From the IMG/VR virus record IMGVR_UViG_3300003877_000001, positions 1 through 64,000 of that record: a stretch of DNA of 64,000 bases; one strand, given 5' to 3'. Shown piece after piece: positions 5,309 through 54,519 of the stretch. Both the position numbers and the translations under genes were made by a program. The notes under the pieces were generated by a model. It had not been told where the DNA came from. It did no database searches and was given only the letters and a program-made list of their open reading frames with translations. How positions within the stretch are numbered: position 1 is the stretch's first letter; every line of letters begins with the position of its first letter.

Positions 5309-5407
5309 CTAGAATAATACATCTAGTACATTAGTCTACGTATATATTCAAAACGCTAGAGTTAACTTTCCAACTATAGGTTTATAAAAATATAACAGGA
5401 ATTTGTG

Positions 5408-6073
5408 TTAATTATTTAATTGTTGATGAGTTTGATTACAATAATGAGATTTAATCATTTTAATATAGCTTCTATCAGTTGATTTTTCAATCATTTCACT
5501 TCTTCTATTTTTGGATAGTTCTCTTATTTGATTTACATATAATCCATATATGTTAATCAAAGTGTAATCATCCCACATATGATTAACATCTAACTCTTTT
5601 AAAGATTCATGTATATCATCAATAATTTCATTAATAATTTCTCTTATTTCAATAGAAAATCTCGAAGCAGGGTTATAATTATCAACATAAAATTTCCTCT
5701 CAACAATAGGATTATCATTAATATATAAACCAAATTTACATTCAATACCTTTTATGGTTTTATTACCATATTTATATTTAATAAAATTTGGTTTAGATAG
5801 TTTATTTTCATCAATACAATATAAATCTATTAATTTCTTATAATTTTCTAAGAAATCATACCCATAATCCTTATAATTTAAATTTCTTCCTGACATAACT
5901 CTTTGTAGATTTTGAATTATTTCAGGAATGGAATCCCGAATGTCAACCGAATATCTAATTATGGGATTAAAAACATCTGCATTGAATATTCTTTCAATTA
6001 TTATGTCTTTACCTTGATAAAGGACAAATTTGAATTTATTTGTATGTGATTTTTCTTGTACTTTTTCAGTCAT
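5408..6073 (-). CDS. Hypothetical protein in the replication block
   Basis: 221-aa ORF with its own host-type promoter. Confidence 0.7.
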   Translation of the reverse strand: MTEKVQEKSHTNKFKFVLYQGKDIIIERIFNADVFNPIIRYSVDIRDSIPEIIQNLQRVMSGRNLNYKDYGYDFLENYKKLIDLYCIDENKLSKPNFIKYKYGNKTIKGIECKFGLYINDNPIVERKFYVDNYNPASRFSIEIREIINEIIDDIHESLKELDVNHMWDDYTLINIYGLYVNQIRELSKNRRSEMIEKSTDRSYIKMIKSHYCNQTHQQLNN

Positions 6074-28144: not shown

Positions 28145-29215
28145 TTATCGGTAATTCCGATTTATATTTTTAAATTCATTGTACCATTTATTTTTTGTTA
28201 TTGCATCATGTGCACCAAGTTGATTTTTTTTAAAATCATTATATGATTTATATTTTTTTACTTCAATTAAACAATTCTCCAATGTCCAATAATTATTTGG
28301 TTTTTTTAAAAGAATCATATGTTTGGTAATATCAATATACCAATTATTTCTATGTGCTGCTTGATAGGCATTAGAACTATTTTTTTTAAATTCACTTTTT
28401 GTTTTATATTTTTTTGCCTCAATTAAACATTTTTCTTTTGTCCATTTTATTTTTTGTTTTTTCATATGTTTACAACATTCTTTTAACCACCCATTATTTA
28501 ATGTACTATTATATGCTGTTCTATTATTTTTTATAAATTCAGTTTTTGTTTTATATTTTTTTGCCTCAATTAAACATTTTTCTTTTGTCCATTTTAAATG
28601 ACTATTTTTTGGCATATGATTATAACATTCTTTTAACCATCCATTTCTTTTTGCGGAATTATATGCACCACCAAATTTTATTTTAAATTCTGATTTTGTA
28701 TTACATAATAATCCAGCTTCAACACATTTTTTTTTCGTCCAAAAGATAATACCACAACCCAAAGCACCACATTTATTTTTATTTAAAATATTCCAACCTT
28801 TCTTATTATAGTGTTCTAGAATATCACCCACAACAATTGAAGCAAGTTTTTTATCTAATAATTTAGTTTTTTGAATAAAAATTGGTACTAATTCAGTTTT
28901 TTTTATATATTTATATACAGTACTTTTTTTAGATGTTAAATGTTCATTTTTCCTTCTACTAAGATCATATGTTAAACCAACATATATTGATTTATCTAAA
29001 AATTCAAATACATAAATAAATCTTTTAAACCTAGAACCTAAAATCTCCATATGTTTAATAGAGTCTTCAAAACAATTTAATTTTTTAGATGCTTTATATG
29101 AACTATTCGATTTTATTGCCCATTCGGTCTTCGAATTAAATTTTAATGCTTCTATTTTAATATTCTCAATATTCCATTTTTTATTTTTTCTTTTAAATTT
29201 CCCTTGGTAATTCAT
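28145..29215 (-). CDS. GIY-YIG-type homing endonuclease with tandem repeats of about 44 aa
   Basis: FIYVFEF..KSIYVGLT...RRKNEH; several KWTxExCxxEAKKY...AY....NGW repeats; start revised to MNYQG (29215). Confidence 0.75.
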   Translation of the reverse strand: MNYQGKFKRKNKKWNIENIKIEALKFNSKTEWAIKSNSSYKASKKLNCFEDSIKHMEILGSRFKRFIYVFEFLDKSIYVGLTYDLSRRKNEHLTSKKSTVYKYIKKTELVPIFIQKTKLLDKKLASIVVGDILEHYNKKGWNILNKNKCGALGCGIIFWTKKKCVEAGLLCNTKSEFKIKFGGAYNSAKRNGWLKECYNHMPKNSHLKWTKEKCLIEAKKYKTKTEFIKNNRTAYNSTLNNGWLKECCKHMKKQKIKWTKEKCLIEAKKYKTKSEFKKNSSNAYQAAHRNNWYIDITKHMILLKKPNNYWTLENCLIEVKKYKSYNDFKKNQLGAHDAITKNKWYNEFKNINRNYR

Positions 29216-29900
29216 CTTTATATAATTCACTAAAGATTTTTTTATTATTATCCCATTCAATGTTTGTTTGACCAATAGAATTATGAATTATTGAGATTTT
29301 ATCTATAACACCAATATTACATCCATCTAAATAGTTTGGAAATATCATTCCTAGATCGTAATAGTGAAACCCTTTAAATCTTTCATCAAATCTATTTATA
29401 ATAGTTTCACCATTAACACAAATAAAAACACCATCAACAACAACAACTTCTTTAATATTTTTTATTTCTCTACTATAAATACTCTCAAAAATTCTAATTC
29501 CATTATTATGATAAACTCTACCATACATTTTTTTTCTGTTCATTTCTTTACCGTCTTCGGTTAACCACCAACATCCATGTTTAGGCAATTCCGTACTACC
29601 TGCCAAACCAATAATATCATAATCATTTTTATTAAATATATTTACTATTTTTTTGCTCCAATCTTTTGTTCTAATTAATATATCATTATGTAGAAATACA
29701 ATTATATCCTTACCAAGACCTAATTTATCTAAAGTTTTCCATCCCATATTATATGCTTCAGATAGTGAAAATTCATTCATATTTACAATACATTCTACAT
29801 GAATAGGTATACCAGCAGTATTTTTTAAATGAGATATAAATTTATTATTATCTTCTTCAGAATAATGACTACTAAAAATTACTGATAAATTTTTTTTCAT
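29193..29900 (-). CDS. Glycosyltransferase-like protein (GT-A)
   Basis: SLSEAYN, VFLHNDI, IIGLAG, VDGVFI, FHYYD. Confidence 0.8.
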   Translation of the reverse strand: MKKNLSVIFSSHYSEEDNNKFISHLKNTAGIPIHVECIVNMNEFSLSEAYNMGWKTLDKLGLGKDIIVFLHNDILIRTKDWSKKIVNIFNKNDYDIIGLAGSTELPKHGCWWLTEDGKEMNRKKMYGRVYHNNGIRIFESIYSREIKNIKEVVVVDGVFICVNGETIINRFDERFKGFHYYDLGMIFPNYLDGCNIGVIDKISIIHNSIGQTNIEWDNNKKIFSELYKDELPREI

Positions 29901-30468: not shown

Positions 30469-33400
30469 TATGCTGATGTTGGTTGTTTAACTTTTCTAGC
30501 TATTTCTTGTGTATTATTTCTTACTTCTCTCACTTCATTACCATCAACATCTTTACTACCAAAAAGTTCAGTCATTTGTGCTTTTTCCATTTCACTTGCT
30601 CTTTCATAAATACCCGTATTATAAAATGTTGAATTAGCATAGTAATTAAATGATACCGCATTTTGTAGTGCATTAATTGGTGTTTGAAGTGATTGACCAC
30701 CAACAAGTTTTAATTGTAATTTTATATCAGCTATCATAAATTGCATACCCATACCTTCAGGATTCATATCCCAAGGAGCATCAGTATAATCTATTTGTAA
30801 ATTATCAATAACAACTTTAGTATGGAACATATCTCCAATTCTTAATATTTGAACTGGTTGTCTACCAAATACTGAATTACTAGCACTAAATGTATTATTT
30901 TTACCTCTTTGTTTTCGTATTGCATTACCTTGACGTGTACATTGATGTAAAAATGTTAATCTTCTATGAAAATCTTCTGGTGTTTGAGAATGAAAAATTG
31001 GTTTATATTTATTCTTTTGACTTGATTCAAATCCTTTTAAAACACCATCTTCGATTGTATATGTATTATATGTACAATTAGCATTATTTTTTGCTTTTTG
31101 AGTTGAAATATTTGTTTCTAAAACTTGAATTTCTTCATTTAATGAATCTATATTTTCTTGATCTGTTGTTGTTATTGGAACTTCTTTATTAATTGTTACA
31201 TTATTTTGTCCAAACGTTACAAATGCTCTTCTAGCTTCTTTAGCAGGTTGACTAGCTATTTCACTTATTTCATCAGTTGCAGTACCACCAACTTCACCAA
31301 TAGGGGTTTTTGGTATTACTACCTTTATACCTGCTTGTTCTAATGATTGACCTGTAAGTGTTTTAAATTTTTCATCAATAAATGCTACAACAGCATTAAT
31401 TCTTCTTCTACTTAATCTTACATTATAATCATCATCATTACCAAGAAATAAAACTGATGCAGATCCATTAATACGTAATTCAGTATATTCCCTAACTTTT
31501 TCATCAACAAGATATTTGGTAATATTTTCTTCAATATCTTGAATAAATGATTCATTCAATCCAAAATTTGCACCATCGACATCACTTGTATGTGCAGCAA
31601 TATCATGATTTTTATCTATTTCATAATATCTACTGATATGATCTCCAATTGATGTTGATTCACCACCAATTTTAGGTTCATCATTAATAAAGAAAAAATT
31701 ATTTGTTAATTCAATAAAATCAGGTCTAGCTTGTTTTATTTTAGGTTGAATACTTTCTCTTTCCTCAATTAATTTCTCTTTTTTTCTAATTTTATCACCT
31801 AAATTACTACCTTGAAGTGGTGCTTCACCACCAAAAGCAAAAAATCTATTAGCCTCTACATGACTCATCCCTTTTATTTGTGGTGGATAATCAATTAATA
31901 ATTTAAAAGATAAGTTTGCAATTCTTTCAGTATTATTATATGTATAAATTGGTTCACCTCTACCAATAAAATTTGTACTTTCATGATTAACTACAACATT
32001 TTCAGTTACACTTATATCATATGGTGGAAACCACATAAGACGACCACCAAATTTACCAACTTCACATAATGGTAGTTCAGTACCTTTTTCATCTTGAACT
32101 AAACCATAATTCATTGTTTCATCTGGATATACTTCAAATGCTAAATTTTCAATAGAAAACATCATATTCCTATTATTAATATCATTACCATCAATAATTG
32201 GATGTATTTTAGGTATAACATTTTTATAAACTACTGAATTTTCATTACCATTATAAATTTTATTTCCATTAAATCTTATTGCTTTAACAAACGTATTATA
32301 TGGGTCAAGAACAGTATGTTGACGGTTTTTATCTATTTCACCATCTAATCTAACTCTCAATGGTGAACCGTTAAAATGTAATTGTTCATCATTATCAATA
32401 AATTTCTTTCTCGTTAAATCAAAACTACTATTTTTACCTTTAGAGTTTAATAATTCTCTAGTATAGCTTAATAATCCACCATTTTTTATATTAAATTTAT
32501 CAATCTCACTAATATTACCAAATCTATCTAATTTACTTTCAACACCACCATTATCACTTGGTTGTATACCATCAACAGGATTATCAAAACCACCTACTTC
32601 GTCCTTATATGATGTATTATCAGTATCACGACCCCAAACTAATTGTTGTTTAGGATCATCAACTAAACCATAATCATCACCATCTAGTGAATATATTCCT
32701 GTACTAATAATTTGACCATTTAAACCAATATCAATATTATTACTATCTAATTCAGCATTACCCATTCCATCAATGAATATTTGTGATGCACCATATTCTA
32801 AATAACCAGAACTATCTTGATTTTGGTTTATGAATGTTATTCTTTCTTGATAAAGTTTATTGTTAAGTGCTGTTATATCAGCAGTTGTTTTATATTGATT
32901 ATATGGATTGAATACTTCATCTCTACCTAAGAAATATTTATTATTAAATTGAACATCAACATTCATTCCATAATTAAATCCTTCTGCATTTGATAAATCT
33001 ACAAATGGTCTTGATGAAGGTTGGTATAGATTTTTGCTTAATTCTTTATAAAATAATTGAAGTTGTCCTTTTCCTGAATTTCTAATAAAATCAAGATTAT
33101 TTGTTTCTTTAGTAAATGGATTTCCTTTTAATGGATAATTACCACTAACTTCTTCTAATATTTTTCCTACATTACCTTGGGTTTCTCTTCTTGTTATTTG
33201 AAAATCTTCCTTTTTCATTATAAATTTAGTATCAGGATTACCATCAAATAAATTTTCAAACTTTATTGCTGGAAGATATTCAGCAGCAGCATTAGATGCA
33301 GCAGTATAACCTAATTGTATTGCAAGCATTTTTAAACCTATTGCTGTTAATGGTGTTTGACCTTCAGCTAATCTACCTACGATAGTTGTAACAGTAGTAC

Positions 33401-33545
33401 CAAAAGGATTTATAACATTAGCTATATTTCCAATTACATTAATAGTTTCAGTACCACTAACATTATATGGATCATTAGGAGTATATAAATTTCTTGTTTC
33501 TAAAAACTCTCTGGTTTGAACACTATTATCTTCTAATCTTGACAT
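30468..33545 (-). CDS. Large baseplate/tail protein with an OmpA-like insertion
   Basis: 1025 aa between the tape-measure and gp53-like genes; NFIGRGEPIYTYNNTER; GSAS...YNVRLSRRRINAV. Confidence 0.6.
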   Translation of the reverse strand: MSRLEDNSVQTREFLETRNLYTPNDPYNVSGTETINVIGNIANVINPFGTTVTTIVGRLAEGQTPLTAIGLKMLAIQLGYTAASNAAAEYLPAIKFENLFDGNPDTKFIMKKEDFQITRRETQGNVGKILEEVSGNYPLKGNPFTKETNNLDFIRNSGKGQLQLFYKELSKNLYQPSSRPFVDLSNAEGFNYGMNVDVQFNNKYFLGRDEVFNPYNQYKTTADITALNNKLYQERITFINQNQDSSGYLEYGASQIFIDGMGNAELDSNNIDIGLNGQIISTGIYSLDGDDYGLVDDPKQQLVWGRDTDNTSYKDEVGGFDNPVDGIQPSDNGGVESKLDRFGNISEIDKFNIKNGGLLSYTRELLNSKGKNSSFDLTRKKFIDNDEQLHFNGSPLRVRLDGEIDKNRQHTVLDPYNTFVKAIRFNGNKIYNGNENSVVYKNVIPKIHPIIDGNDINNRNMMFSIENLAFEVYPDETMNYGLVQDEKGTELPLCEVGKFGGRLMWFPPYDISVTENVVVNHESTNFIGRGEPIYTYNNTERIANLSFKLLIDYPPQIKGMSHVEANRFFAFGGEAPLQGSNLGDKIRKKEKLIEERESIQPKIKQARPDFIELTNNFFFINDEPKIGGESTSIGDHISRYYEIDKNHDIAAHTSDVDGANFGLNESFIQDIEENITKYLVDEKVREYTELRINGSASVLFLGNDDDYNVRLSRRRINAVVAFIDEKFKTLTGQSLEQAGIKVVIPKTPIGEVGGTATDEISEIASQPAKEARRAFVTFGQNNVTINKEVPITTTDQENIDSLNEEIQVLETNISTQKAKNNANCTYNTYTIEDGVLKGFESSQKNKYKPIFHSQTPEDFHRRLTFLHQCTRQGNAIRKQRGKNNTFSASNSVFGRQPVQILRIGDMFHTKVVIDNLQIDYTDAPWDMNPEGMGMQFMIADIKLQLKLVGGQSLQTPINALQNAVSFNYYANSTFYNTGIYERASEMEKAQMTELFGSKDVDGNEVREVRNNTQEIARKVKQPTSA

Positions 33546-33841
33546 TAATATAAAATATTTATTATAAATACTTGTATTTGAAATTAGAATTTATTAGATT
33601 TACATTGAATTACTATGTACTATCGCTAAATACTATATATTTTTTTTCTAAAATCTAGTTGAGTTGTATATAATAGAAATTATTAAATAATCTAAATCTT
33701 ATCCATATAACCATAGACCTAAAAATAAAAGCAAAAGGGTTGCCCTGTATAATTTCGAAATGCTTTTAAATATTTGTTGTTTTTGTTTTGTGTTATTTCT
33801 CTTTTTGTTTCTTGTTATTAAGTTCTAAAAGCAAAGTTTTG

Positions 33842-33872
33842 CAAATTTACCGTTTTTATTTGATAAAGTCAA
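33842..33872 (-). promoter_or_regulatory. Bacteroidota primary-sigma promoter
   Basis: TTG-N20-TAAATTTG. Confidence 0.6.
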
Positions 33873-33938
33873 GTCTTTTTAATAAAAAATGAAAATAAAT
33901 ATTTATGTAACCTTTTTTATTTATATACGTATATTCTA

Positions 33939-34310
33939 TTGTCACAAGTTTGACAAATATACAAAAAATATTGAATATGAGGAAGTTAATTAAAAAAATT
34001 AACCCAAATGAATATCTAAAATTATCAACATATGCTAAAAAATATAGTATAGTTAAAAGAAAGATATATCGTTATGTTGATGATGATTTAGTAGATAATG
34101 TTAAAATAGATGGAATCCCATTTATTAAAGATATTCATTTTCCTATCCTAGAACGTGATAATCGTGAATCTATTGTCCCAAGTTTGTCAATAGATACTTC
34201 TATTGTCCCAACTGTGACATTAAAAAGTGGTGAAAGTACTGATAATCAAGTAGATAATCCTATTGTCCCAACTGTGACATTAGATAAGTATATTGTCCCA
34301 AGTGTGACAA
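33939..34310. repeat. Array of five palindromic TTGTCM-N6-TGWCAW sites
   Basis: Copies at 33939, 34173, 34203, 34263 and 34293; a sixth at 38244. Confidence 0.85.
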
Positions 34311-34417
34311 TAGAAGAAAATGAAAAAATAGAATTAAATAATCTTTTAAATAAGCCTGAAAGTGATACAACTATTAGTGATTATAAAAGAATTGAAGAAT
34401 TAAAAAATAAATATTAA
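33977..34417 (+). CDS. Putative HTH DNA-binding protein
   Basis: YLKLSTYAKKYSIVKRKIYRYV (excisionase/MerR-like); start revised to the ATG at 33977; IVP(S/T)(L/V) repeats encoded by the DNA palindromes. Confidence 0.55.
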   Translation: MRKLIKKINPNEYLKLSTYAKKYSIVKRKIYRYVDDDLVDNVKIDGIPFIKDIHFPILERDNRESIVPSLSIDTSIVPTVTLKSGESTDNQVDNPIVPTVTLDKYIVPSVTIEENEKIELNNLLNKPESDTTISDYKRIEELKNKY

Positions 34418-34420
34418 ATA

Positions 34421-36928
34421 TTAAACACTACCACCTTGTACATGTACCAATTGTGCAGGTACTTTCTTAGCAATATTTGTGTAGAATGAACTATCACCAA
34501 CATTAACATCAATATTAGCCACAAGTGCTACTTCTTGTTCACTGAATTGAACTTTAAGCGGTTTAGATAACATATTAACTAATTGACCAATTCCACTATT
34601 ACTACTTACATCTGTTGATGCAATAGATTGTATTGTATTTTTAACATCTGCAAGCTGTCCTACCGATCCACTCATAACAGCTCCAATACTTGTAAATGCA
34701 TCACCTACAATTTTCATACCATTAGAACTTGAAGCTATTGCCATTACTGAAGCTGCCATACCAGCAACACCTAACATTGTAATAGGGTTTGCAAATAATA
34801 AAGTTGCAGCACCAATAGCTGCTAAATCACCACCAATTCCAGATAAATCTGCACCACTTAACATTGCTAAACCTTCTCCCATATATCCAATACCAGCAGC
34901 AGCAATACCAATACCTGCTCCAATACCTAATACAGCTAATGTCAGAATTCCTATACCAATTGCTGATACTTCTGCTGCTTTACCGAATATTAACATACCA
35001 GCAGCCATAAGTGGAACAGCAATAGCTAATCCTAGTGCAACTCTTTCGAAACTTTCTAATTGTTCTACACTTAATTTAGACATGGAATCTGCTAAAGCAG
35101 CAACACCTTTAGCTGCAATCATTATACCAGTACCCATACCAACAGCAGCAACACCAACACCAGCACCTTTACCTAAAGCAGCCATTCCACCACCTCTTGC
35201 AGCACCACTAGCACCTTTAGCAAGACCACCAACACCTTTAGTTGCAGTACGTGCAATACCTTTACCAGCACCACCAATCAGACCACCAATACTTGGTAAT
35301 ATACCTTTTAATATTCTGATCATTGGAGATGCCATCATTAAAACAGCACCAATTGCACCAGCACCTGAAAGTATATCTTTATTTGTTTTAGATAAATCAC
35401 CAAACCATTCCGATATATTTGTAACAATAGGTCTTATAAATTCTAATACTGAATTAATACCATTAAGCATAGGAAGTAATGTTGATTTTAATTCCATTAT
35501 AGTATTTTTCATTGCATCATCAAATGTTTGAGAATCTAATGCACGTTGTTTTAAACTAGCACTTTGTTCTTTTAAACCACTTAATTGATCAGAACCAATA
35601 TTTGATACATCAGTAGCAATACCACCTATTTCAACAAACATTCTACCTGTAGTTTTATCAAATTTAGCAAGACCCTCAATAATATCTTTTTCGTCTTTAG
35701 TAAATCCTTTAGAATTCATTTGTGAACGAGTTTGTTGAATTTCTCTCATTCTAAATGCTTGTTTAGTAAGTTCTTCAGTAGTCATACCAAGTGCTTTAGC
35801 TGCTTGTGAAAGCTGATCTTTAGCCATAGGAGAAGCTAATGCAAAATCAAATCCATCAGCAGTCTTATTCAACGTAACCATACCTTGTGTCATTTCGTTA
35901 ATACGTTTCATATATGCTTCAGGATCATTTCTAGATTCAAAAAGCATAGACATAGGATCTGCTAAACTAGCAAATTTACCACCAAGTACTTGTAATTGTG
36001 CACTCATTTCAATTACTGAATCTAATCTTCTACCCTTTTCCATAGGTTCAAAAACAGAATTCATATCTATTTTAAATTTTTCAGCATAAATAGCCATATC
36101 AGCCATAGATTTTACACCATTTCTAAATGAATATTTTTGAAGTTTTTTGAAGTTCGAATTAACAGCTTTTAATACTTTACCAGTATTAACACCCATTCTT
36201 TCAGTAGTATCAACAATTCTTTGTACTTCACCAGCAGTATCAGTAGCATTGAAACCCATCATTTCATATTGACCAGCCATACGAGCAGCACCTTCAATAC
36301 CTAAAGAAGTACCTTTAGCTATTAAAGTCATTGATTCTAAATTTTCTTGATTAAATTGTCTAACTCTACCTGTTTCATCAGCATATGTACTAACCATTTG
36401 AGTAAGACCTTTCATATCAATACCCATACGAGCAGCAAACATGGAAGAATCTTCTAAATTATTTCGCATCATTGCTGAACGATCACCAGATAATCCCATT
36501 TCAAGATTAAGATTTTTAATACTTGCATCAGCATCCATTAAAAATGTTTTCATAATACCAGCATTTTTACTAATTGCAGTGCCTAATGAACTAACTGTTT
36601 TAAGGAGTAATTTTTGTGTATCTAATGTTTTTTCTGATTTTGATAATATTTTATCTTGAGCATCGGATTGATTTTTATATTTTTTTAGTAAATATTTACT
36701 AATTTTATCTTGATTAGATAGATGTTTAGTTATGGTTTCATCAATATTAGCTTGTTTATTTCTTTTTTGATTAATAATTTCTTCCTCTACTGCTTGTTTT
36801 CTTCTTAGGTTATAGATATTATCTAATTTTGATAATTCCCTTTCAAGTAAACGAATATTTTCATTAGCAATAGCATTAGCTGCTTCTGTTTCTTCTTTTA
36901 ATTGTTTAGCCGATATTTTTTTTGCCAT
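34421..36928 (-). CDS. Tail tape measure protein
   Basis: 835 aa, helical, with an A/G-rich hydrophobic C-terminal half; downstream of the chaperone frameshift pair. Confidence 0.8.
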   Translation of the reverse strand: MAKKISAKQLKEETEAANAIANENIRLLERELSKLDNIYNLRRKQAVEEEIINQKRNKQANIDETITKHLSNQDKISKYLLKKYKNQSDAQDKILSKSEKTLDTQKLLLKTVSSLGTAISKNAGIMKTFLMDADASIKNLNLEMGLSGDRSAMMRNNLEDSSMFAARMGIDMKGLTQMVSTYADETGRVRQFNQENLESMTLIAKGTSLGIEGAARMAGQYEMMGFNATDTAGEVQRIVDTTERMGVNTGKVLKAVNSNFKKLQKYSFRNGVKSMADMAIYAEKFKIDMNSVFEPMEKGRRLDSVIEMSAQLQVLGGKFASLADPMSMLFESRNDPEAYMKRINEMTQGMVTLNKTADGFDFALASPMAKDQLSQAAKALGMTTEELTKQAFRMREIQQTRSQMNSKGFTKDEKDIIEGLAKFDKTTGRMFVEIGGIATDVSNIGSDQLSGLKEQSASLKQRALDSQTFDDAMKNTIMELKSTLLPMLNGINSVLEFIRPIVTNISEWFGDLSKTNKDILSGAGAIGAVLMMASPMIRILKGILPSIGGLIGGAGKGIARTATKGVGGLAKGASGAARGGGMAALGKGAGVGVAAVGMGTGIMIAAKGVAALADSMSKLSVEQLESFERVALGLAIAVPLMAAGMLIFGKAAEVSAIGIGILTLAVLGIGAGIGIAAAGIGYMGEGLAMLSGADLSGIGGDLAAIGAATLLFANPITMLGVAGMAASVMAIASSSNGMKIVGDAFTSIGAVMSGSVGQLADVKNTIQSIASTDVSSNSGIGQLVNMLSKPLKVQFSEQEVALVANIDVNVGDSSFYTNIAKKVPAQLVHVQGGSV

Positions 36929-36972
36929 TTTTTCAGAATAATTTTACTAATTATAAATACATTTAAATATAA

Positions 36973-37155
36973 TTACTTTCTTCTGGCTTGTTGACTTGCT
37001 TTTGCATTTGCTTTTTCATGAGCTTTTTTAGTACTCTCAAGTTCTTCCTTTAAAAGATTAAGATAAAATCTTCTTTTATATACAGGAATCCCTTCAACAT
37101 ATTCAGCATTAAATTTTGCATGTTTTGTAAGGAGATAAATCTCTTCCATTATCAT
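36973..37155 (-). CDS. Tail assembly chaperone C-terminal ('T') segment, probably reached by frameshift
   Basis: The -1 frame of 37173..38144 is open from the T9 run into this ORF. Confidence 0.7.
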   Translation of the reverse strand: MIMEEIYLLTKHAKFNAEYVEGIPVYKRRFYLNLLKEELESTKKAHEKANAKASQQARRK

Positions 37156-37172
37156 CTTTTTATATTCACCTG

Positions 37173-38144
37173 CTAGTGACTTGGGAAAAAAAAATCAATA
37201 CCCATACTTAACGGTGCTTCGAATTTATAACCGTCTGGTGCTGTAAACATATATTTCATTTCAACTTCAGGAGATACATCTAATAATTTTCTTCTTATAG
37301 TAAATGCATCTAAGGCTGGCATAACATCAACAAAACGTTCAATATATGATCTATCTCTATTACCATTAATTTCCATAATAGATGCTTTTAATCTCATAGT
37401 ATTAAATTCTGATACTTCTTCTTGATATGCTTCTCTACGTGCTTCTGCTTGTTTAAATATAATATCTTCAGCACCTGAAGTTAAAAGTTTTACACTAACT
37501 TTTTTCTTTCTCATAGGTATTTCAACTACAAACTCACCAGCAGCATTAGGTTTTTCATTAACTTCTTTATATTTTAATGTTAATAAATCCACATCTTCTT
37601 CAAAACTATTTCCGTTTCTAGGATCAGGAACAGAAACCTTATATATATTACCATATGATGATGTTCTTAAAAATAAAATAAGTGCACTTCTATCACCACT
37701 TAATAAATTTTTAGGATTAATATTTTTATCTACAATTTTTCTAGCTAATAACTTATCTAATACCGAACCATCATCAATGAATGATGGTGTGGTTAAAAGG
37801 TCTTCATCTCTTGAAGTAAGATATTCAATTTGAACTTCTTTTAATCCATCTGGATAAAATAAACCTTTTGATGGTAATGAAACAACTTCATATGACATCA
37901 ATAAATCAGGATCATTTTCAGTTTGAATTTGATTTTGTAAATTATCTGCATTATAATTTAATGTTTGTGCAGGTATATTAATTGGTTCAGGTATTTGTGG
38001 TGTTGGTATAACTGATGGATCATCTACTGTTGGTATAGAATTATCTTTTGGTGGTTCAATTCCTTTTGATTTATAATATTCTTCCATAGCGTTTTTCATT
38101 GCTATTCCTTCTAATTCTTTTTCTGTTTTTTTTTCTGTTGCCAT
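37173..38144 (-). CDS. Tail/baseplate assembly chaperone (T4 gp26-like)
   Basis: VSLPSKGLFY, LTSRDEDLL, LLSGDRSALILFLR; ends GIDFFF. Confidence 0.7.
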   Translation of the reverse strand: MATEKKTEKELEGIAMKNAMEEYYKSKGIEPPKDNSIPTVDDPSVIPTPQIPEPINIPAQTLNYNADNLQNQIQTENDPDLLMSYEVVSLPSKGLFYPDGLKEVQIEYLTSRDEDLLTTPSFIDDGSVLDKLLARKIVDKNINPKNLLSGDRSALILFLRTSSYGNIYKVSVPDPRNGNSFEEDVDLLTLKYKEVNEKPNAAGEFVVEIPMRKKKVSVKLLTSGAEDIIFKQAEARREAYQEEVSEFNTMRLKASIMEINGNRDRSYIERFVDVMPALDAFTIRRKLLDVSPEVEMKYMFTAPDGYKFEAPLSMGIDFFFPSH

Positions 38145-38274
38145 TTTATAATATTTTATAAAAATTTATTAGTTCTACAAATAAATAGTACATAATAAAA
38201 TTTAATTCAAGATTTTCTTTTTTCATTCGTATAATATAGTACAATGTCAAAAATTTGACAATATAAATTAATAT

Positions 38275-40116
38275 ATGGCAGTAAAAAGAGGAAACAAAAG
38301 AAAAAATTCAATTGATCCAGAATCAATTGAACGGGACGAAAATACGACAAGGATTAATGATGAAAAGAAAAGAATTAGGTCTGCTTTAAACAGGGATGTT
38401 AATATATCGGCTAAAAATGTTAGTCAAAAAGACCTAATTAAATCTATATTGAGAAATGAGATAACCATCTGTTCAGGACCTGCTGGTACTGGTAAAGCAC
38501 AACCATTAGATAGTCTTATTTTAACTGAAAATGGTTATGTTAGAATGGGAAATATAAATATTGGTGATAAAATATTTGGTAAAAACGGAAAATTAACTAA
38601 AGTTAATGGTGTTTTTTATCAAGGAAAAAGGGAAGCATATTTGGTTACATTTTCAGATGGGTCAAAAGTTGAATGTTGTGATGAACATTTATGGTTAACA
38701 TATAATGATTATGAAAGAAATTATTTAAAAAATAGTCGTGGTACAATAAAAACATTGTCTGAAATAAACATTAACTATAAGAATAAATCAAATAAATTGA
38801 AATATTCAATTCCTATTGTTGATGCAATTGAGTTTAAGAAAAAAAAATTATTAGTTGATCCATATTTATTAGGGGTATTATTAGGTGATGGTTCACTAAC
38901 AACGACAATTAGAATTAGTAGTTCTGATAAACAAATAATTAATGAATGTGATTCTAGATTACCAAATGATTATTTTATAAAAAAAATAAAATCATCTAAA
39001 TATGATTATTCTATTTTAAATAAAATATCAAACAAAAAATATTCATATAGAAAATATATTAATGAATTAAAGTTAAATGGTATTAAATCTGAAAATAAAT
39101 TTATACCGAATAATTATTTATATTCATCAATAAATGATAGAATTGAATTATTACAAGGACTAATGGATTCAGATGGTACTGTAGATAAAAAAAGTGGAAC
39201 ATTATCATTTACTAGTACATCTAAAGAATTAATTTTAAATTTAAAATTTATTATAGAATCTTTAGGTGGGGTAATAAACCCAATTAAAGAAAAGGTAAAA
39301 AAATATAAATATAAAAATGAAATTAAATTAGGAAGAATTTCATATAGTATGTCATTTAGGTTACCAAATAAAATAATTCCATTTAAATTAAATAGGAAAA
39401 AAGGTTTATTTAAAAATAAAACAAAATATTTCCCTGTTAGATATATAAAAAATATTGAATTTATTGGTAAAAAGGAAATGAAATGTATAAGTGTTGAAGC
39501 TAATGATAATTTATATATTACAAATAATTTTATTATAACACACAATACTTTTATTTCACTTGCTTTAGCATTGGGTTTGTTAAGAGCAGAAAATAATAAA
39601 TTTTTAAAAATTTATCTTGTTAAATCAGTAACAACATTAAAGGGTGAAGAAATTGGATTCTTAAAAGGTGATTTAAATGAAAAAATTGAACCATTCATTT
39701 GGAGTTTTGTATTAAATGTTGAAAAATTATTACCAGATACAAAAATTAAATCATTAATGGAAAATGATTTTATTCGCCCATTTCCTTTAGCATATGCACG
39801 TGGTGCATCAATTGATAATGCTATTATTATAGCTGATGAAGTACAAAATATTTCAATAGGTAATATGCGTACTTTAATGACTAGAATAGGTGAAGATAGT
39901 AAAATGATTTTATTAGGTGATTCTAATCAAATTGATTTAAGAAATAAAGATGAAAGTTCGTTAGATATTTTATTAAATATGTTTAAAAATGTTGAAGAAA
40001 TTGGATGTATTAGTATGAATGATAAAGATGTAAATATTAGAAATCCAATAATAAATAAAATCGAAGATAAATTTAAAGAACATAATGATGAAAAAATCAG
40101 AAGAAAATCAAAATAA
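38275..40116 (+). CDS. phoH: PhoH-like ATPase interrupted by an intein
   Basis: GPAGTGK|T P-loop, LAYARGASIDN, ADEVQN, LMTRIGE, GDSNQIDL. Confidence 0.9.
   Translation: MAVKRGNKRKNSIDPESIERDENTTRINDEKKRIRSALNRDVNISAKNVSQKDLIKSILRNEITICSGPAGTGKAQPLDSLILTENGYVRMGNINIGDKIFGKNGKLTKVNGVFYQGKREAYLVTFSDGSKVECCDEHLWLTYNDYERNYLKNSRGTIKTLSEININYKNKSNKLKYSIPIVDAIEFKKKKLLVDPYLLGVLLGDGSLTTTIRISSSDKQIINECDSRLPNDYFIKKIKSSKYDYSILNKISNKKYSYRKYINELKLNGIKSENKFIPNNYLYSSINDRIELLQGLMDSDGTVDKKSGTLSFTSTSKELILNLKFIIESLGGVINPIKEKVKKYKYKNEIKLGRISYSMSFRLPNKIIPFKLNRKKGLFKNKTKYFPVRYIKNIEFIGKKEMKCISVEANDNLYITNNFIITHNTFISLALALGLLRAENNKFLKIYLVKSVTTLKGEEIGFLKGDLNEKIEPFIWSFVLNVEKLLPDTKIKSLMENDFIRPFPLAYARGASIDNAIIIADEVQNISIGNMRTLMTRIGEDSKMILLGDSNQIDLRNKDESSLDILLNMFKNVEEIGCISMNDKDVNIRNPIINKIEDKFKEHNDEKIRRKSK
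38497..39546 (+). mobile_element. Intein with LAGLIDADG endonuclease (350 aa)
   Basis: Starts AQPL, ends ITHN, +1 residue Thr; LLGVLLGDGS and LLQGLMDSDG motifs. Confidence 0.92.
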
Positions 40117-51765: not shown

Positions 51766-54519
51766 TTATAAATCATCAAACGATGCACCTTCAGGAGTAA
51801 TAGTGAACGTAATACCGATGAATTCAAGAGACTTGGTAGGCTTCAAGAATATTTCACCAAATAATTCGTTTCTATCTCTACTTTCAGGAGAGTTATTTGA
51901 ATCATCCATCTTAATTCTAAATTCAGTAAGACCTCTTTCTCTTCTAATAGAATCCAATACTGGATTAGCTTTAGATAAGAATTCATCTACTGTTGCTTGA
52001 TCATTTTGTTCAAATAATAACTTACTTGCTATGTTAGCAATAAGAACTTTAATTTGAAGTAATAATCTTCTTACATTAATTCTATCAAGTGCACTTTCTT
52101 TAAATTGAAGAGTCTTTTGACCAAATATTGCAGTTCCAACATCTGAAAAATCAGCCATTGGATTAATTCTACCAGCATAAAGTGTATCTCTAGAATCTTG
52201 AGACATTCTATATTTTGATCTTCTTGCATCAGTCACACCTCTTTGTAAACCAGCAGGTGCATACCAAGGGAATTTAACATTATCAGTAAATGCCATTGCT
52301 TTAAGTACCTCACCAGTAGGTGGTAACCAAATGTTAACGTTATTTTGTGTATCTGGAATTTGAATCCAAGGGAAATATGTACAAGCATAACTTGTATCAA
52401 TTGCAGTATTTTCTAGTAAATCAACAATCTCTGTTGCTGCAAGATTATCTGCTCTTTCACCTACTTCGATAGCAATATCAATATCAGGAGAATCAATAAT
52501 ATATAATGTATCAGTTCTTTGTGTTTCCATTATTTCAATAGTATCTTGAACAATTACAGTATTATCACCAAAATTAATTCCCGGTGTTGCAAATATGTTA
52601 ATTGTAACTTCTTCAGGGTTTGCAAATGTTAATATTGCAGTTTCCCATGCTTGGAAATCATTATGTGGTGTAACACCATCTTCAACACCATCAAATATTC
52701 CACCTTTTCTATAATTATCACCAAAAGTTCTTGATCCACGATGTTCATCCCAACCATCAAAACCACCAGCAGGAACTAATGTAAATTTACGTGAATTTAC
52801 TTCACCATAAACATCACCATCTTGAATATCACCTGAAGTTCTAAATCTACCAGCACCAACTTCAAATTCTCCTATTAATGTATTACCATCATAGAAAATA
52901 CCTGTAGCACCAGAATCCATATGGAAACCTTTAGATTTAGCAGGAGTACCTTTACCTCTGTAATTAAAATGATTTTGATCTATACCTATTGTATTAATAA
53001 AATTATCTGCTGAATAAGCAGTTTCAGAAATACCTAATGATACTCTATTTAATCTTTCGTCTGGTAAATAAAATGTTTTATAAAGTATTGATGGTGCAAT
53101 ACCTTCGGCAGAAGCTGTTGTAGCAGAAGCTGCCCAATCATTTTGAATATAACCCTCAAAACCAGCAGGGAAAGCATCTGGTTCAGCATTTTCATTAATC
53201 TCTAACATAATATATTCACTTTGAAGAACATATTCACCATTAGCAGTACCAATTCTATTACCAATAAAATTAGTTTCACCTTTTCTCATTACACAACGTG
53301 AAAACGATTCTAATACAATAGGATTTGCATCTGTATCATTAAAGTCACGAACTATAATATTAAATTCTTTTGAAATTGGATCAATATTAGTTATTGATAT
53401 TTTAATTTCTTTATTTGCATTATCACCATCAGATATTGATATGAATTTAAATAATTGATCAACATCATTACCTTTTAATTGTGATACAACCCAAGGGGTT
53501 TCAGGTGTTTGAAATTGCTCTTGATAATCTGTAAATATTGATGCATCTGCATCAATCATTATTGTATTTAAACCATAACCACTACCATTAGCATCTAATA
53601 ATCTTGTTAAATCTGGATAAACTCTTTCACACCAAATTTTACCATTTTTACCTTTAGGTTCGCTACCAATTACACTTGGTAAGAATTCTGCTGAATTAGG
53701 ATCTAATGATACTACAAAAGTTTCTGTTGATGGATCAGTATCAAATGCATCAGGTGCTTTGAATGCACTTAATTCAAAATTCCCAAACATATTACCAATA
53801 CCTGTATTAGTTTCATTTGCAATCATTGTTAATGTGTCAGTATCAAATCTTGTTGTAGGTACTGCATCATCATTATCCGTTACACTACCTCTTGAACGAA
53901 CTACTGCAAGTACCATATTTTCTAATTCAGTTTGAGATGTTGCACTAAAAGTTACCAATGTATCATCAACAGTACCACTTAATGAAGTTCCTGTATATGA
54001 TGTTACTACAAAATCATGTCTTACACCAGTAAAAGCTGAACCAGATTTAGTAAATCCAGTAAAAGTTGAACCAGTTTGTCCAATAGCATTTAAACCTACA
54101 CCTAAATAGCTTCCATTACTGAAAGGTACACTAACAGGTGCTGCGGTAGATACTTCTCCTATTGTTGCTTCATCAACACCTGCACTTAATGTAATTGCCC
54201 ATGCAGTACCTGCATCATATCCCGATAAACCAAGTACTCTTGTTACCCATGCTTGGTTTGATTCATTTAGATATGCATTAACTGCATAGGGTAATTGATA
54301 TCTTAATTCTAAATTCCCACTTGGAAATTTTTCAGTGTTTTGTTCACCAAAACGAGTTCTAAATTGTCCTTTGTCCTGTACGAATACTGGTTCAAAAGCA
54401 GGTCCTTTAACAGTTTCACCTACGATTCCCAATGTTGTTACACCAACATTTCTAGTAACGAAAGATAAGTCTCTTTCACGAAATTTATAACCGGGTGAGG
54501 TAAATACAAATTCAGCCAT
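51766..54519 (-). CDS. Tail sheath protein (T4 gp18-like)
   Basis: FTSPG....ERD, GETVKGPAFEP, PWYAPAG..RG, FGQKTL, LDRINVRRLL. Confidence 0.93.
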   Translation of the reverse strand: MAEFVFTSPGYKFRERDLSFVTRNVGVTTLGIVGETVKGPAFEPVFVQDKGQFRTRFGEQNTEKFPSGNLELRYQLPYAVNAYLNESNQAWVTRVLGLSGYDAGTAWAITLSAGVDEATIGEVSTAAPVSVPFSNGSYLGVGLNAIGQTGSTFTGFTKSGSAFTGVRHDFVVTSYTGTSLSGTVDDTLVTFSATSQTELENMVLAVVRSRGSVTDNDDAVPTTRFDTDTLTMIANETNTGIGNMFGNFELSAFKAPDAFDTDPSTETFVVSLDPNSAEFLPSVIGSEPKGKNGKIWCERVYPDLTRLLDANGSGYGLNTIMIDADASIFTDYQEQFQTPETPWVVSQLKGNDVDQLFKFISISDGDNANKEIKISITNIDPISKEFNIIVRDFNDTDANPIVLESFSRCVMRKGETNFIGNRIGTANGEYVLQSEYIMLEINENAEPDAFPAGFEGYIQNDWAASATTASAEGIAPSILYKTFYLPDERLNRVSLGISETAYSADNFINTIGIDQNHFNYRGKGTPAKSKGFHMDSGATGIFYDGNTLIGEFEVGAGRFRTSGDIQDGDVYGEVNSRKFTLVPAGGFDGWDEHRGSRTFGDNYRKGGIFDGVEDGVTPHNDFQAWETAILTFANPEEVTINIFATPGINFGDNTVIVQDTIEIMETQRTDTLYIIDSPDIDIAIEVGERADNLAATEIVDLLENTAIDTSYACTYFPWIQIPDTQNNVNIWLPPTGEVLKAMAFTDNVKFPWYAPAGLQRGVTDARRSKYRMSQDSRDTLYAGRINPMADFSDVGTAIFGQKTLQFKESALDRINVRRLLLQIKVLIANIASKLLFEQNDQATVDEFLSKANPVLDSIRRERGLTEFRIKMDDSNNSPESRDRNELFGEIFLKPTKSLEFIGITFTITPEGASFDDL

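What the first reader, a model, noticed from the sequence alone, without database searches (positions are those of the whole stretch)
33560..34417. HTH gene carrying an in-phase array of its own candidate binding sites: possible origin, centromere or regulatory hub
Seen: the palindrome TTGTC(A/C)-N6-TG(A/T)CA(A/T) occurs at 33939 (between the -10 element and the ATG) and four times inside the ORF at 34173, 34203, 34263 and 34293 (spacings of 30, 60 and 30 bp, about 3 helical turns per step). A sixth copy at 38244 sits between a CGTATAAT element and the PhoH ATG. A ~400-bp AT-rich non-coding region with divergent promoters lies next to it. Established: lambda ori is an iteron array inside its initiator gene O next to an AT-rich region, and plasmid parS arrays also sit next to their binder genes. 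Inference: a compact origin/partition module or a looping autorepressor that also controls the PhoH operon.
Basis: partly seen in the sequence, partly recalled or inferred. Interest (0 to 1): 0.72.

Follow-up and report, generated by a model that had tools for sequence, protein, structure and literature searches.

The report
Phage gene built around its own binding sites
A small DNA-binding protein gene of an uncultured 326-kb T4-like jumbo phage carries, inside its own coding sequence, a conserved array of the palindrome that also covers three promoters, so the DNA sites dictate part of the protein; it is most likely a self-targeting regulator, and it remains a candidate replication origin.

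Summary
TTGTCM-N6-TGWCAW occurs 6 times in the window (0.15 expected): once 3 nt after the -10 of the gene's own promoter, four times in frame inside ORF 33977-34417, and once over the PhoH promoter start. The whole genome has one more perfect copy, on a promoter at 127.7 kb.

The ORF encodes a MerR/Xis-type winged-helix domain, a disordered linker and two C-terminal helices. About 45 unnamed relatives exist, all metagenomic. Every locus checked (14) has the same synteny and 3-6 in-ORF sites.

Selection acts on the DNA. Third codon positions in half-sites are 98% identical (80% in the N-terminal domain), while the encoded peptides change (IVPSLSI, NVTSLTI, NVKILTK). The Val codon is nearly always GTC, which is 2.3% of Val codons genome-wide.

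Operators over the promoter starts indicate repression of its own, the PhoH and a vWA-like operon promoter. Three clades lack promoter operators but keep the array, so the array is the core element and not just a looping partner.

Its role is unresolved: roadblock or autoregulation is favoured, and a lambda-O-like or T4-oriE-like origin is possible. GC skew gives the origin no support. No ParA or tubulin was found, and TerL is distant.

The parts
33546..33976 (.). 431-bp AT-rich (19.5% GC) non-coding region between the divergent 1025-aa late gene and the HTH gene. It has blocks conserved in relatives.
   Evidence: A comparable 440-505-bp gap is present in L009, L014, L011, L140, L141 and L142.
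33563..33571 (-). Late-type promoter motif GTATTTATA, 26 nt upstream of the 1025-aa gene start (33545).
   Evidence: The motif is enriched upstream of genes: 61 upstream regions against 7 expected. There are 78 copies in the genome, 45 within 60 nt of a start. It also lies upstream of the 835-aa gene, at 36960. It is invariant in relatives.
33906..33935 (+). Promoter of the HTH gene, TGTAACC-N15-CGTATATT. It belongs to a genome-wide ECF-sigma-like promoter class.
   Evidence: 14 genome copies of GTAAC[CA]-N~16-CGTATAWT, mostly 35-56 nt upstream of gene starts. It is invariant in relatives. The phage encodes two ECF-size sigma factors.
33939..33956 (.). Promoter operator, the perfect palindrome TTGTCA-N6-TGACAA. 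It starts 3 nt after the -10 element and covers the predicted transcription start.
   Evidence: It occupies the same position (-37 to -49 from the ATG) in 10 of 14 loci.
33977..34417 (+). ORF of 146 aa (P0001). Residues ~10-60 form a winged-helix domain, ~63-111 a disordered linker encoded by the site array, and 112-145 two helices.
   Evidence: The ATG start is supported by the alignment of relatives.
34173..34190 (.). In-ORF site 1 (TTGTCC-N6-TGTCAA), encoding IVPSLSI.
34203..34220 (.). In-ORF site 2, 30 bp after site 1, encoding IVPTVTL.
34263..34280 (.). In-ORF site 3, 60 bp after site 2, encoding IVPTVTL.
34293..34310 (.). In-ORF site 4, 30 bp after site 3, encoding IVPSVTI.
38228..38235 (+). 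The -10-like element CGTATAAT of the PhoH operon promoter. The upstream TTCAAGA box is conserved in L141 and L155.
38244..38261 (.). Operator over the predicted PhoH transcription start (ATGTCA-N6-TGACAA), 8 nt after the -10 element and 13 nt before the ATG.
   Evidence: An orthologous perfect site with the same 8-nt offset is in L141. It is absent in L155.
38275..40116 (+). PhoH gene, interrupted by a LAGLIDADG intein. It is the first gene of the rightward 14-gene block.

Best explanation
The locus is a self-contained 'binder plus site array' module. It is conserved in a clade of uncultured, AT-rich, T4-like jumbo phages.

The 146-aa product has an N-terminal MerR/Xis-type winged-helix domain. 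I infer that it binds, probably as a dimer, the palindrome TAWTGWCA-N6-TGWCAWTA, whose half-sites lie 11 bp (one helical turn) apart.

Its primary, universally conserved target is a cluster of 3-6 sites, here 2+2. These sites are embedded in frame in the part of its own gene that encodes the disordered linker. The DNA sites therefore dictate that stretch of peptide (x-V-x-x-[LVM]-T-x).

In this phage and three related clades, further single copies lie directly over predicted transcription starts. One follows the -10 element of the gene's own ECF-sigma-type promoter. One covers the start of the PhoH-led operon promoter. In this genome one more overlaps the promoter of a vWA-like-led 24-gene block at 127.7 kb. 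At these sites the protein should act as a repressor by occlusion.

The intragenic array most likely forms a high-occupancy nucleoprotein block. Such a block would stop RNA polymerase inside the gene, giving autogenous control by roadblock. It would also insulate this lone rightward gene from the convergent late transcription of the abutting 835-aa hub/tape-measure gene. No terminator separates the two.

What is shown: the sites, their DNA-level selection, their conservation, their promoter positions and the protein fold. What is inferred: that this protein is the binder, that it represses, and the roadblock mechanism.
For: 1. The sites are far beyond chance and specific in spacing.
2. Selection acts on the DNA. 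Across six close loci, third codon positions in half-sites are 98% pairwise identical. The figures are 80% in the N-terminal domain and 74% in other linker codons. Amino-acid identity in site codons is only 58%, against 78% in the N-terminal domain.
3. Codon choice fits the motif and not the genome. In 54 in-ORF sites from 13 loci the C of GTC/GAC is invariant, although GTC is 2.3% of Val codons. TTG and GTG fill the next constrained codon, at 7.9% of Leu and 6.1% of Val codons.
4. The link to this family is complete. All ~45 family proteins carry the V-x-x-[LVM]-T repeats. All 14 loci with DNA carry the array.
5. Coding and non-coding copies evolve in concert. The L140 variant TGTCG is in all four ORF sites and in its promoter operator. 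The L009 promoter operator is identical to its ORF sites.
6. The fold is DNA-binding. AF2 gives pLDDT ~90 for residues 10-60, arranged strand-helix-helix-strand-strand. The top structural matches are almost all MerR/Xis DNA-binding domains: BldC, Pukovnik Xis, CvkR, SoxR, BmrR and TipAL, at Z 4.6-5.8.
7. Operator geometry fits repression. The offset from the -10 element is 3 nt at the gene's own promoter and 8 nt at PhoH. Both are conserved in L141 at 40% protein identity. The 127.7-kb copy overlaps a TTGACA-17-TATATT promoter.
8. The array is kept where promoter operators are lost, in L142, L075, L143 and L155.
9. The gene ends 3 nt from, or overlaps, the convergent 835-aa late gene. No terminator is predicted between them. 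The neighbours use a different, late-type promoter.
10. An RNA or DNA hairpin is unlikely. Eight of 54 sites have the same central base in both half-sites (TGACA..TGACA or TGTCx..TGTCA), which breaks the central pair.
Against: - No binding data exist. The homodimer prediction gave no answer.
- The protein has no Pfam or PHROG hit. Structural Z scores of 5-6 are moderate for a 50-residue domain.
- Pairs of TGTCA-N6-TGACA are common in unrelated IMG/VR contigs (more than 120). Another, widespread factor could therefore recognise this palindrome.
- Roadblock autoregulation with four sites inside one's own ORF has no close precedent known to me.
- A conserved 430-500-bp AT-rich region next to the gene is not explained by this model and is more typical of origins.
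- Deep conservation of the array without promoter operators would also fit a non-transcriptional cis function.
Confidence: 0.45

Rival explanations
1. Replication origin. The array would be an iteron cluster bound by the gene's product, as with lambda O and ori-lambda. Alternatively it would stall the gene's own transcript so that it primes DNA synthesis, as at the R-loop origins of T4 (oriE with repEA/repEB). The adjacent 431-bp AT-rich region would be the unwinding element.
For: - Four inverted-repeat sites lie inside the gene of a protein with an N-terminal DNA-binding domain, in the linker-coding part. In lambda, likewise, 4 iterons, each a 19-bp inverted repeat, and an AT-rich tract lie in the middle of O (PMC7466680).
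- The array is the universally conserved element, independent of promoter operators.
- A conserved, unusually long 19.5%-GC non-coding region with promoters lies beside it.
- There is a positional parallel with T4 oriE. That origin lies in the baseplate-hub gene 5, has small genes and a primer transcript antisense to late transcription, uses a non-late promoter and has evenly spaced repeats (PMC3016281).
- T4 origins tend to lie near transcriptional divergence points. The genome's main divergence is 4 kb away, at 38.2 kb.
Against: - The GC3 skew of the coding strand is the same for genes of either orientation on both sides of 38 kb. The skew minimum therefore reflects gene orientation only.
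- There is no homology to O or other Rep families.
- The C-terminal part is only ~35 residues. No helicase-loader gene is adjacent. The helicase is 29 kb away and the polymerase is at ~300 kb.
- No conserved AT tract directly abuts the sites.
- The copies at the PhoH and vWA-like promoters look like operators.
- The T4 oriE 'iterons' coincide with the gp5 beta-helix octapeptide repeats. No role for them in replication has been established.
Confidence: 0.22
2. Centromere-like or anchoring site. The protein would coat the array to position, tether or organise the phage chromosome, as RacA does at ram sites, as pSK1 Par does at its centromere, or as Spo0J does at the parS inside spo0J.
For: The same winged-helix fold occurs in the RacA and pSK1 Par DNA-binding domains (ranks 20 and 22). 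The site cluster lies in or next to the binder's gene. The C-terminal helices could mediate oligomerisation.
Against: No ParA/CbiA and no tubulin/PhuZ gene is in the genome. The gene content is that of a T4-like lytic phage. The C-terminal part is much shorter than the coiled coils of RacA or Par. No plasmid-type maintenance genes were seen.
Confidence: 0.08
3. Packaging recognition site. The protein would be a small-terminase-like pac binder whose recognition site lies in its own gene, as in P1 pacA, P22 gene 3 and SPP1 gene 1 (own knowledge).
For: It has an N-terminal MerR-like winged helix, as many small terminases do. Packaging-related domains are among the structural matches (ranks 8 and 23). 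The 2+2 sites with a central gap resemble the layout of P1 pac (own knowledge).
Against: The large terminase is at 92.8-93.6 kb, 59 kb away. A 165-aa ORF occupies the canonical small-terminase slot just upstream of it. There is no oligomerisation core. Contig ends of relatives lie at very different distances from the array. The promoter copies look like operators.
Confidence: 0.05
4. The palindromes are read by some other factor, for example a host CRP/FNR-type regulator or a widespread phage repressor. Alternatively they reflect a protein-level or RNA-hairpin constraint, and the gene merely hosts them.
For: TGTCA-N6-TGACA pairs occur in more than 120 unrelated viral contigs that lack this protein family. 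The half-site resembles CRP-family sites (own knowledge).
Against: The array co-occurs with this family in 14 of 14 loci. Site variants are lineage-specific and shared by coding and non-coding copies. A protein-level constraint is rejected by the codon-position test. A hairpin is disfavoured by the 8 sites whose central bases cannot pair.
Confidence: 0.07

Closest known systems
Lambda O protein and ori-lambda (iterons inside the initiator gene)
   Same: An array of four inverted-repeat binding sites lies in the middle of the gene of the protein presumed to bind them. The sites sit in the segment between an N-terminal DNA-binding domain and the C-terminal part. Binder and sites are thus inherited as one unit (PMC7466680).
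   Different: There is no sequence homology, and the protein is half the size, with only ~35 C-terminal residues. No P-like helicase-loader neighbour is present, and no AT tract directly abuts the sites. Extra copies sit on promoters, and the site spacing is 30/60/30 bp. Replication function is untested and the skew is uninformative.
Repressors with intragenic operators or roadblocks (lac O2, gal OI, CcpA or PurR roadblocks; own knowledge)
   Same: A palindromic operator covers the transcription start, and further copies lie downstream inside coding sequence. Repression by occlusion, looping or roadblock is expected.
   Different: There are four intragenic sites, inside the regulator's own ORF. 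They are conserved even where the promoter operator is lost, and they dictate the protein's linker sequence.
T4 oriE with repEA/repEB
   Same: Both are in T4-like phages, with small non-late gene(s) in the baseplate-hub late cluster. These are transcribed opposite to the late genes, and evenly spaced repeats lie in coding sequence.
   Different: The T4 repeats are 12-nt direct repeats every 24 nt. They coincide with the gp5 beta-helix octapeptide repeat, and their role is unproven. Here the repeats are palindromes under DNA-level selection within the small gene itself.
MerR/Xis-type small DNA binders (BldC, phage Xis, P2 Cox)
   Same: The winged-helix fold is the same. These proteins bind arrays of closely spaced sites and build higher-order complexes (own knowledge of how BldC, Xis and Cox bind).
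   Different: Those proteins bind direct repeats head to tail and lack the linker plus C-terminal helical hairpin. Sequence profiles do not place this family in HTH_17.
pac sites inside small-terminase genes (P1 pacA, P22 gene 3, SPP1 gene 1; own knowledge)
   Same: The recognition site cluster lies inside the gene of its binder, which has an N-terminal winged helix.
   Different: The gene is not next to the large terminase, another ORF fills that slot, and there is no evidence of DNA ends.

Membership tests
MerR/Xis-type winged-helix DNA-binding domain (HTH_17-like) | Strand-helix-helix-strand-strand winged-helix fold | tested here: met
   The AF2 model from the 45-sequence alignment has pLDDT ~90 for residues 10-60. 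VIA-align top matches at Z 4.6-5.8 are almost all MerR/Xis domains. Foldseek gives rmsd 1.6 A over 40 residues to BldC.
MerR/Xis-type winged-helix DNA-binding domain (HTH_17-like) | Match to the Pfam HTH_17/MerR profiles above threshold | tested here: not met
   P0001 has no Pfam hit at E<=0.1. Only 3 of 24 family members hit HTH_17, with a best E of 0.0057.
Lambda-O-type origin (iterons in initiator gene) | Array of inverted-repeat sites inside the coding sequence of a DNA-binding protein | tested here: met
Lambda-O-type origin (iterons in initiator gene) | Homology to O/Rep initiators, with a helicase-loader partner adjacent | tested here: not met
   There are no Pfam or PHROG hits. The neighbours are baseplate-hub genes. 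The helicase is at 3.7-5.3 kb and the polymerase at ~300 kb.
Lambda-O-type origin (iterons in initiator gene) | AT-rich unwinding tract directly beside the iterons | tested here: inconclusive
   A 431-bp, 19.5%-GC region lies about 200 bp upstream of the first ORF site. No conserved AT tract abuts the array.
Lambda-O-type origin (iterons in initiator gene) | Replication-linked strand-composition switch at the site | tested here: not met
   The cumulative skew minimum is at 37.8-38.2 kb. GC3 skew does not differ between co-oriented and counter-oriented genes (p 0.35 and 0.36).
Lambda-O-type origin (iterons in initiator gene) | Initiation of replication at the site | not testable with these tools
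   Only assembled contigs of the source runs are available, and there are no time series.
Autoregulated operator-repressor unit | Palindromic operator overlapping the core promoter or transcription start of its own gene | tested here: met
   33939-33956 starts 3 nt after the -10 element. The same position holds in 10 of 14 loci.
Autoregulated operator-repressor unit | The same operator at other promoters (a regulon) | tested here: met
   Copies at 38244 (PhoH) and at genome position 127700. The PhoH copy is conserved in L141 but absent in L155.
Autoregulated operator-repressor unit | Specific binding of the protein to the operator | not testable with these tools
   The homodimer prediction gave no answer. 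No verdict is offered for jobs that include DNA.
Partition system (ParABS, TubZRC, ParMRC) | Motor protein gene (ParA, TubZ/PhuZ or ParM) | tested here: not met
   No CbiA/ParA match and no tubulin match. ParM was not searched.
Small terminase with pac site | Gene adjacent to the large terminase | tested here: not met
   TerL is at 92.8-93.6 kb, and a different 165-aa ORF lies directly upstream of it.
T4 oriE-type origin | Non-late transcription unit antisense within the baseplate-hub late cluster, with repeats | tested here: met
   The flanking genes resemble gp26, gp51 and gp29 and have late-type promoters. The HTH gene has an ECF-type promoter. The T4 layout was checked.
T4 oriE-type origin | Homology to RepEA/RepEB | not tested
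   RepEA and RepEB are ~45-50 aa. No comparison was run.

The most novel reading that the evidence does not exclude
The module is a replication origin of a clade of T4-like jumbo phages. A minimal winged-helix initiator would be encoded around its own iterons, so that the iterons write the protein's linker. It would fire either by lambda-O-like origin melting or by stalling its own ECF-sigma-driven transcript to leave an R-loop primer. That would give T4-type phages an iteron-and-initiator origin of a kind not yet demonstrated for them.
Probability: 0.2. Interest if true: 0.85.

Novelty: new variant of a known kind. Interest (0 to 1): 0.62.

Why it matters
The family has no name, no Pfam or PHROG model and no cultured representative. 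Yet it is conserved, with its site array and its synteny, across jumbo phages down to ~25% protein identity.

It is a clean natural case in which protein-binding DNA sites override codon usage and amino-acid conservation and so shape part of the binder itself. It also gives a concrete, cheap entry point into the gene regulation or replication of uncultured T4-like jumbo phages: one 146-aa protein and one 22-bp site.

If the array proves to be an origin, it would supply the iteron-plus-initiator logic that has been suspected but never shown at T4 oriE. If it is a roadblock or insulator, it is an unusual way to separate convergent early and late transcription in a dense genome.

Tried and rejected
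- Complex prediction. The homodimer job (protein with the 45-row alignment, 2 copies) scored 0.25, below the 0.42 mark, so it gives no answer and is not used as evidence.
- First structure model. The 7-sequence alignment gave pLDDT 48, which was unusable. It was replaced by the 45-sequence model.
- Foldseek against PDB gave no hit at E<=0.001. The fold assignment rests on the consistency of the VIA-align and Foldseek top rows.
- Deposited phages. blastn of 33000-38500 and tblastn of P0001 and P0017 found no match.
- The search for related loci with the 24-sequence alignment failed for lack of a conserved 7-10-column stretch. With closer queries it returned only an identical copy of this phage, L008/L018.
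- Pattern scan of IMG/VR for paired palindromes. It returned 120 loci, of which only L075 encodes the family. The rest are mostly non-coding pairs in unrelated contigs, and the 'ORFs' covering them look spurious.
- Rfam on 33400-34500 found nothing.
- GC skew as origin evidence was rejected.
- A DnaA-box-like TTATCCATA at ~33700 is not conserved in relatives.
- The sigma-70 promoter scan of the locus found fewer matches than shuffles, and no terminator.
- A minus-strand terminator-like hairpin at ~33716-33747 has alifold z -5.4 against column shuffles. The single-sequence fold gives only z -1.3, so the element is weak.
- Sequencing runs. Only Logan contigs from a hydrothermal-vent or marine source are held, with no RNA run.
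- The original T4 oriE paper (PMC94188) is not held.
- The search for covariation between the recognition helix and half-site variants had too few informative changes.
Full report
**What the window is.** The window is the first 64 kb of a 325,854-bp IMG/VR virus record with 27.5% GC. CheckV rates the record complete, and its ends are classed as linear. The best-matching sequencing run is a hydrothermal-vent metagenome, and weaker holders are marine.

The gene content is that of a distant T4-like myovirus:
- gp26-like baseplate hub at 37173-38144
- gp51-like gene at 36973-37155
- an 835-aa hub/tape-measure-like gene at 34421-36928
- tail sheath at 51766-54519
- DnaB-like helicase at 3654-5276
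- TerL at 92.8 kb
- DNA polymerase B at ~300 kb

The nearest deposited phages share only ~30% identity in the sheath protein.

**Observation.** The pattern TTGTCM-N6-TGWCAW hits 33939 (a perfect palindrome), 34173, 34203, 34263, 34293 and 38244. Shuffles give 0.15 expected. The 22-nt form matches only the five local copies, with 0 expected.

Genome-wide, the only other site with at most 1 mismatch is a perfect palindrome at 127700. No other half-site spacing gives a perfect match. Spacings of 30, 60 and 30 bp and a single shared codon phase are confirmed.

**The gene and its family.** ORF 33977-34417 encodes 146 aa (P0001). It has no Pfam or PHROG hit.

Word-indexed and exhaustive HMM searches found about 45 relatives of 131-190 aa. 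All come from metagenomes and none carries a functional name. All share three parts:
- a conserved N-terminal domain
- 3-6 copies of x-V-x-x-[LVM]-T-x
- a C-terminal segment ending in two helices

With the 45-sequence alignment, AF2 models three regions. Residues 10-60 have pLDDT ~90 and form a strand-helix-helix-strand-strand winged helix. The repeat region (residues 77-109) is below pLDDT 50. Two C-terminal helices (112-125 and 133-145) score ~85.

An exhaustive structural alignment puts MerR/Xis-type DNA-binding domains in nearly all top rows, at Z up to 5.8. They include BldC, Pukovnik Xis, CvkR, RdfS, SoxR, BmrR, GlnR/TnrA, TipAL, Tn916 Xis, RacA, pSK1 Par and P2 Cox. This fold is used by transcription factors, excisionases, centromere binders and small terminases. 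It shows DNA binding but does not decide the function.

In six close loci the sites sit at identical positions: -37, then +197, +227, +287 and +317 from the ATG. The encoded heptapeptides nevertheless change, for example IVPSLSI, IVPTVTL, NVTSLTI and NVTNLTI.

| Region | Pairwise identity at third codon positions | Amino-acid identity |
|---|---|---|
| Half-sites / site codons | 98% | 58% |
| N-terminal domain | 80% | 78% |
| Other linker codons | 74% | not computed |

Across 54 in-ORF sites from 13 loci, positions G2, C4, G13 and A16 are invariant and C15 is kept in 53 of 54. The motif extends to TAWTGWCA-N6-TGWCAWTA, while the two central codons vary freely: K-I, K-N, E-P, P-S, T-N, N-I and K-G.

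The invariant C4 is the third base of GTC, which accounts for only 2.3% of Val codons in this genome. TTG (7.9% of Leu codons) and GTG (6.1% of Val codons) fill the other constrained codon.

Eight sites have the same central base in both half-sites, so the central pair of a hairpin would be broken. This favours protein recognition of TGWCA half-sites over an RNA or DNA hairpin.

Site variants are lineage-specific and are shared by coding and non-coding copies. L140 has TGTCG in all five of its sites. The L009 promoter operator equals its ORF sites.

**Architecture across the family.** Synteny is conserved wherever flanks exist: L009, L140, L141, L142 and L155. A ~1030-aa gene lies to the left on the minus strand, followed by a 440-505-bp non-coding gap. 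Then comes the HTH gene on the plus strand. An ~840-aa gene on the minus strand ends within 3 nt of the HTH gene or overlaps it. Beyond it lie the gp51-like and gp26-like genes, and then PhoH on the plus strand.

The array is usually 2+2. Steps within a pair are 30-33 bp (24 bp once), and steps between pairs are 54-69 bp. Pairs are therefore roughly on one DNA face, but the two pairs are not phased with each other.

**Promoters.** K-mer enrichment upstream of genes reveals two classes.
- GTAAC[CA]-N~16-CGTATAWT has 14 copies. The AAC...CGT pattern is typical of ECF sigma promoters (own knowledge), and the phage encodes two ECF-size sigma factors.
- GTATTTATA has 78 copies, 45 of them within 60 nt of a gene start. 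It lies upstream of the structural genes, including both neighbours of the HTH gene.

The HTH gene uses the first class, at 33906-33935. The neighbours use the second, at 33571 and 36960 on the minus strand. The HTH gene is therefore a lone, differently timed gene inside a late block.

Its operator begins 3 nt after the -10 element, both here and in L141. The PhoH operator begins 8 nt after a conserved CGTATAAY, both here and in L141.

The 127.7-kb copy overlaps a TTGACA-17-TATATT promoter. That promoter lies ahead of a weakly vWA-like gene (below the Pfam cut-off), which opens a 24-gene block. All three positions are those expected of a repressor.

**The array is the core element.** In L142, L075 and L143 the class-1 promoter is intact, but the operator is degenerate or reduced to a half-site.

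In L155 both the gene's own promoter operator and the PhoH operator are absent, although both promoters are recognisable. Three in-ORF sites remain.

The in-ORF array is therefore the universal feature, and the promoter operators are clade-specific additions. This rules out 'auxiliary looping operator' as the array's general function.

**Testing the rivals.**

Origin:
- The cumulative GC-skew minimum is at 37.8-38.2 kb and the maximum at 198.7 kb.
- GC3 skew of the coding strand is equal for genes of either orientation in both halves of the genome. The curve therefore only tracks gene orientation.
- There is no O-like or Rep-like homology, and no replication genes are adjacent.
- The lambda analogy in layout is real. 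So is the positional analogy with T4 oriE.
- However, the T4 'iterons' coincide with the gp5 beta-helix octapeptide repeat, and their role is unproven.

Partition: no ParA/CbiA and no tubulin was found.

Packaging: TerL is 59 kb away, and another 165-aa ORF fills the small-terminase slot.

Another binding factor: paired TGTCA-N6-TGACA sites are common in unrelated viral contigs. The complete association of the array with this family, together with the concerted site variants, favours self-recognition.

**Conclusion.** It is firmly shown that these palindromes are binding sites selected at the DNA level. They are embedded in the linker-coding part of a winged-helix protein gene. They form part of a conserved module in an uncharacterised clade of T4-like jumbo phages.

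I consider it likely (about 0.85) that the gene's own product binds them. In this phage it then probably represses three promoters: its own, the PhoH operon's and the vWA-like operon's.

What the intragenic array does is not settled. I favour a transcriptional roadblock, autoregulation and insulator role, because of three observations: the operator-type copies, the convergent late gene with no terminator, and the absence of any replication, partition or packaging partner. An origin function remains a serious alternative, at about 0.2.

Noticed in passing
window 38275-40116: PhoH is interrupted by a LAGLIDADG homing-endonuclease intein. The PhoH and AAA matches fall at residues 48-78 and 425-600, with LAGLIDADG_3 and Hom_end between them. 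The PhoH genes of relatives L141 (267 aa) and L155 (255 aa) lack the intein.
   Followed up: partly
genome-wide; window 33906-33935, 33563-33571 and 36952-36960: There are two phage promoter classes. GTAAC[CA]-N~16-CGTATAWT has 14 copies and is ECF-like. GTATTTATA has 78 copies and is late-type. Two ECF-size sigma genes lie outside the window, at genome positions 188.8-189.3 kb (+) and 260.0-260.5 kb (-). Which sigma reads which class is unknown.
   Followed up: partly
window 33727-33880: The long intergenic region has blocks conserved in relatives that the model does not explain. They are two TAAAAGCAAA boxes 99 bp apart (the second inside the near-palindrome GCAAAGTTTTGC), a ~50-bp T-rich tract at 33776-33822, and a CAAAGTCAAGTC box ~35 bp upstream of the -35 element.
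   Followed up: partly
window 33716-33747 (minus strand): A weak terminator-like hairpin followed by a U-tract lies on the minus strand, between the HTH promoter and the late promoter of the 1025-aa gene. The alifold z is -5.4 against column shuffles, but the single-sequence z is only -1.3.
   Followed up: partly
IMG/VR loci L019-L138: Pairs of TGTCA-N6-TGACA 25-54 nt apart occur in more than 120 unrelated viral contigs. Most are non-coding. A recurrent subtype has starts offset by ~41-42 nt in 32-37%-GC contigs. L069 has 12 copies with a 132-bp period inside an 816-aa ORF, and L079 and L085 have 10-11 copies. This suggests a widespread operator type with an unknown binder.
   Followed up: partly
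L152 (T4 NC_000866) 5403-5570: The T4 oriE 'iterons' (GTTGAAGGTAAT every 24 nt) coincide with the octapeptide repeats of the gp5 C-terminal beta-helix. A protein-level repeat could therefore explain them.
   Followed up: partly
proteins P0030 and P0032: Two proteins of ~300 aa consist of 4-5 tandem copies of a domain related to the N-terminal winged helix of this family (...YLTVKEYCEKY...IKIGGRRFIKDEP...).
   Followed up: no
window 28145-29275: A 376-aa ORF with a GIY-YIG nuclease domain lies inside the structural gene block. It is probably a homing endonuclease.
   Followed up: no
L155 7136-7151: In the clade that lacks promoter operators, one extra perfect TGTCAAAATTTTGACA lies inside a 386-aa ORF downstream of PhoH. 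It could be chance or a further target.
   Followed up: no
L007 200-407 (genome 126.4-126.6 kb): Two tRNA-Lys(UUU) genes lie just upstream of the third operator-bearing promoter. A class-1 promoter at genome position 112224 also precedes tRNA-like sequence.
   Followed up: no
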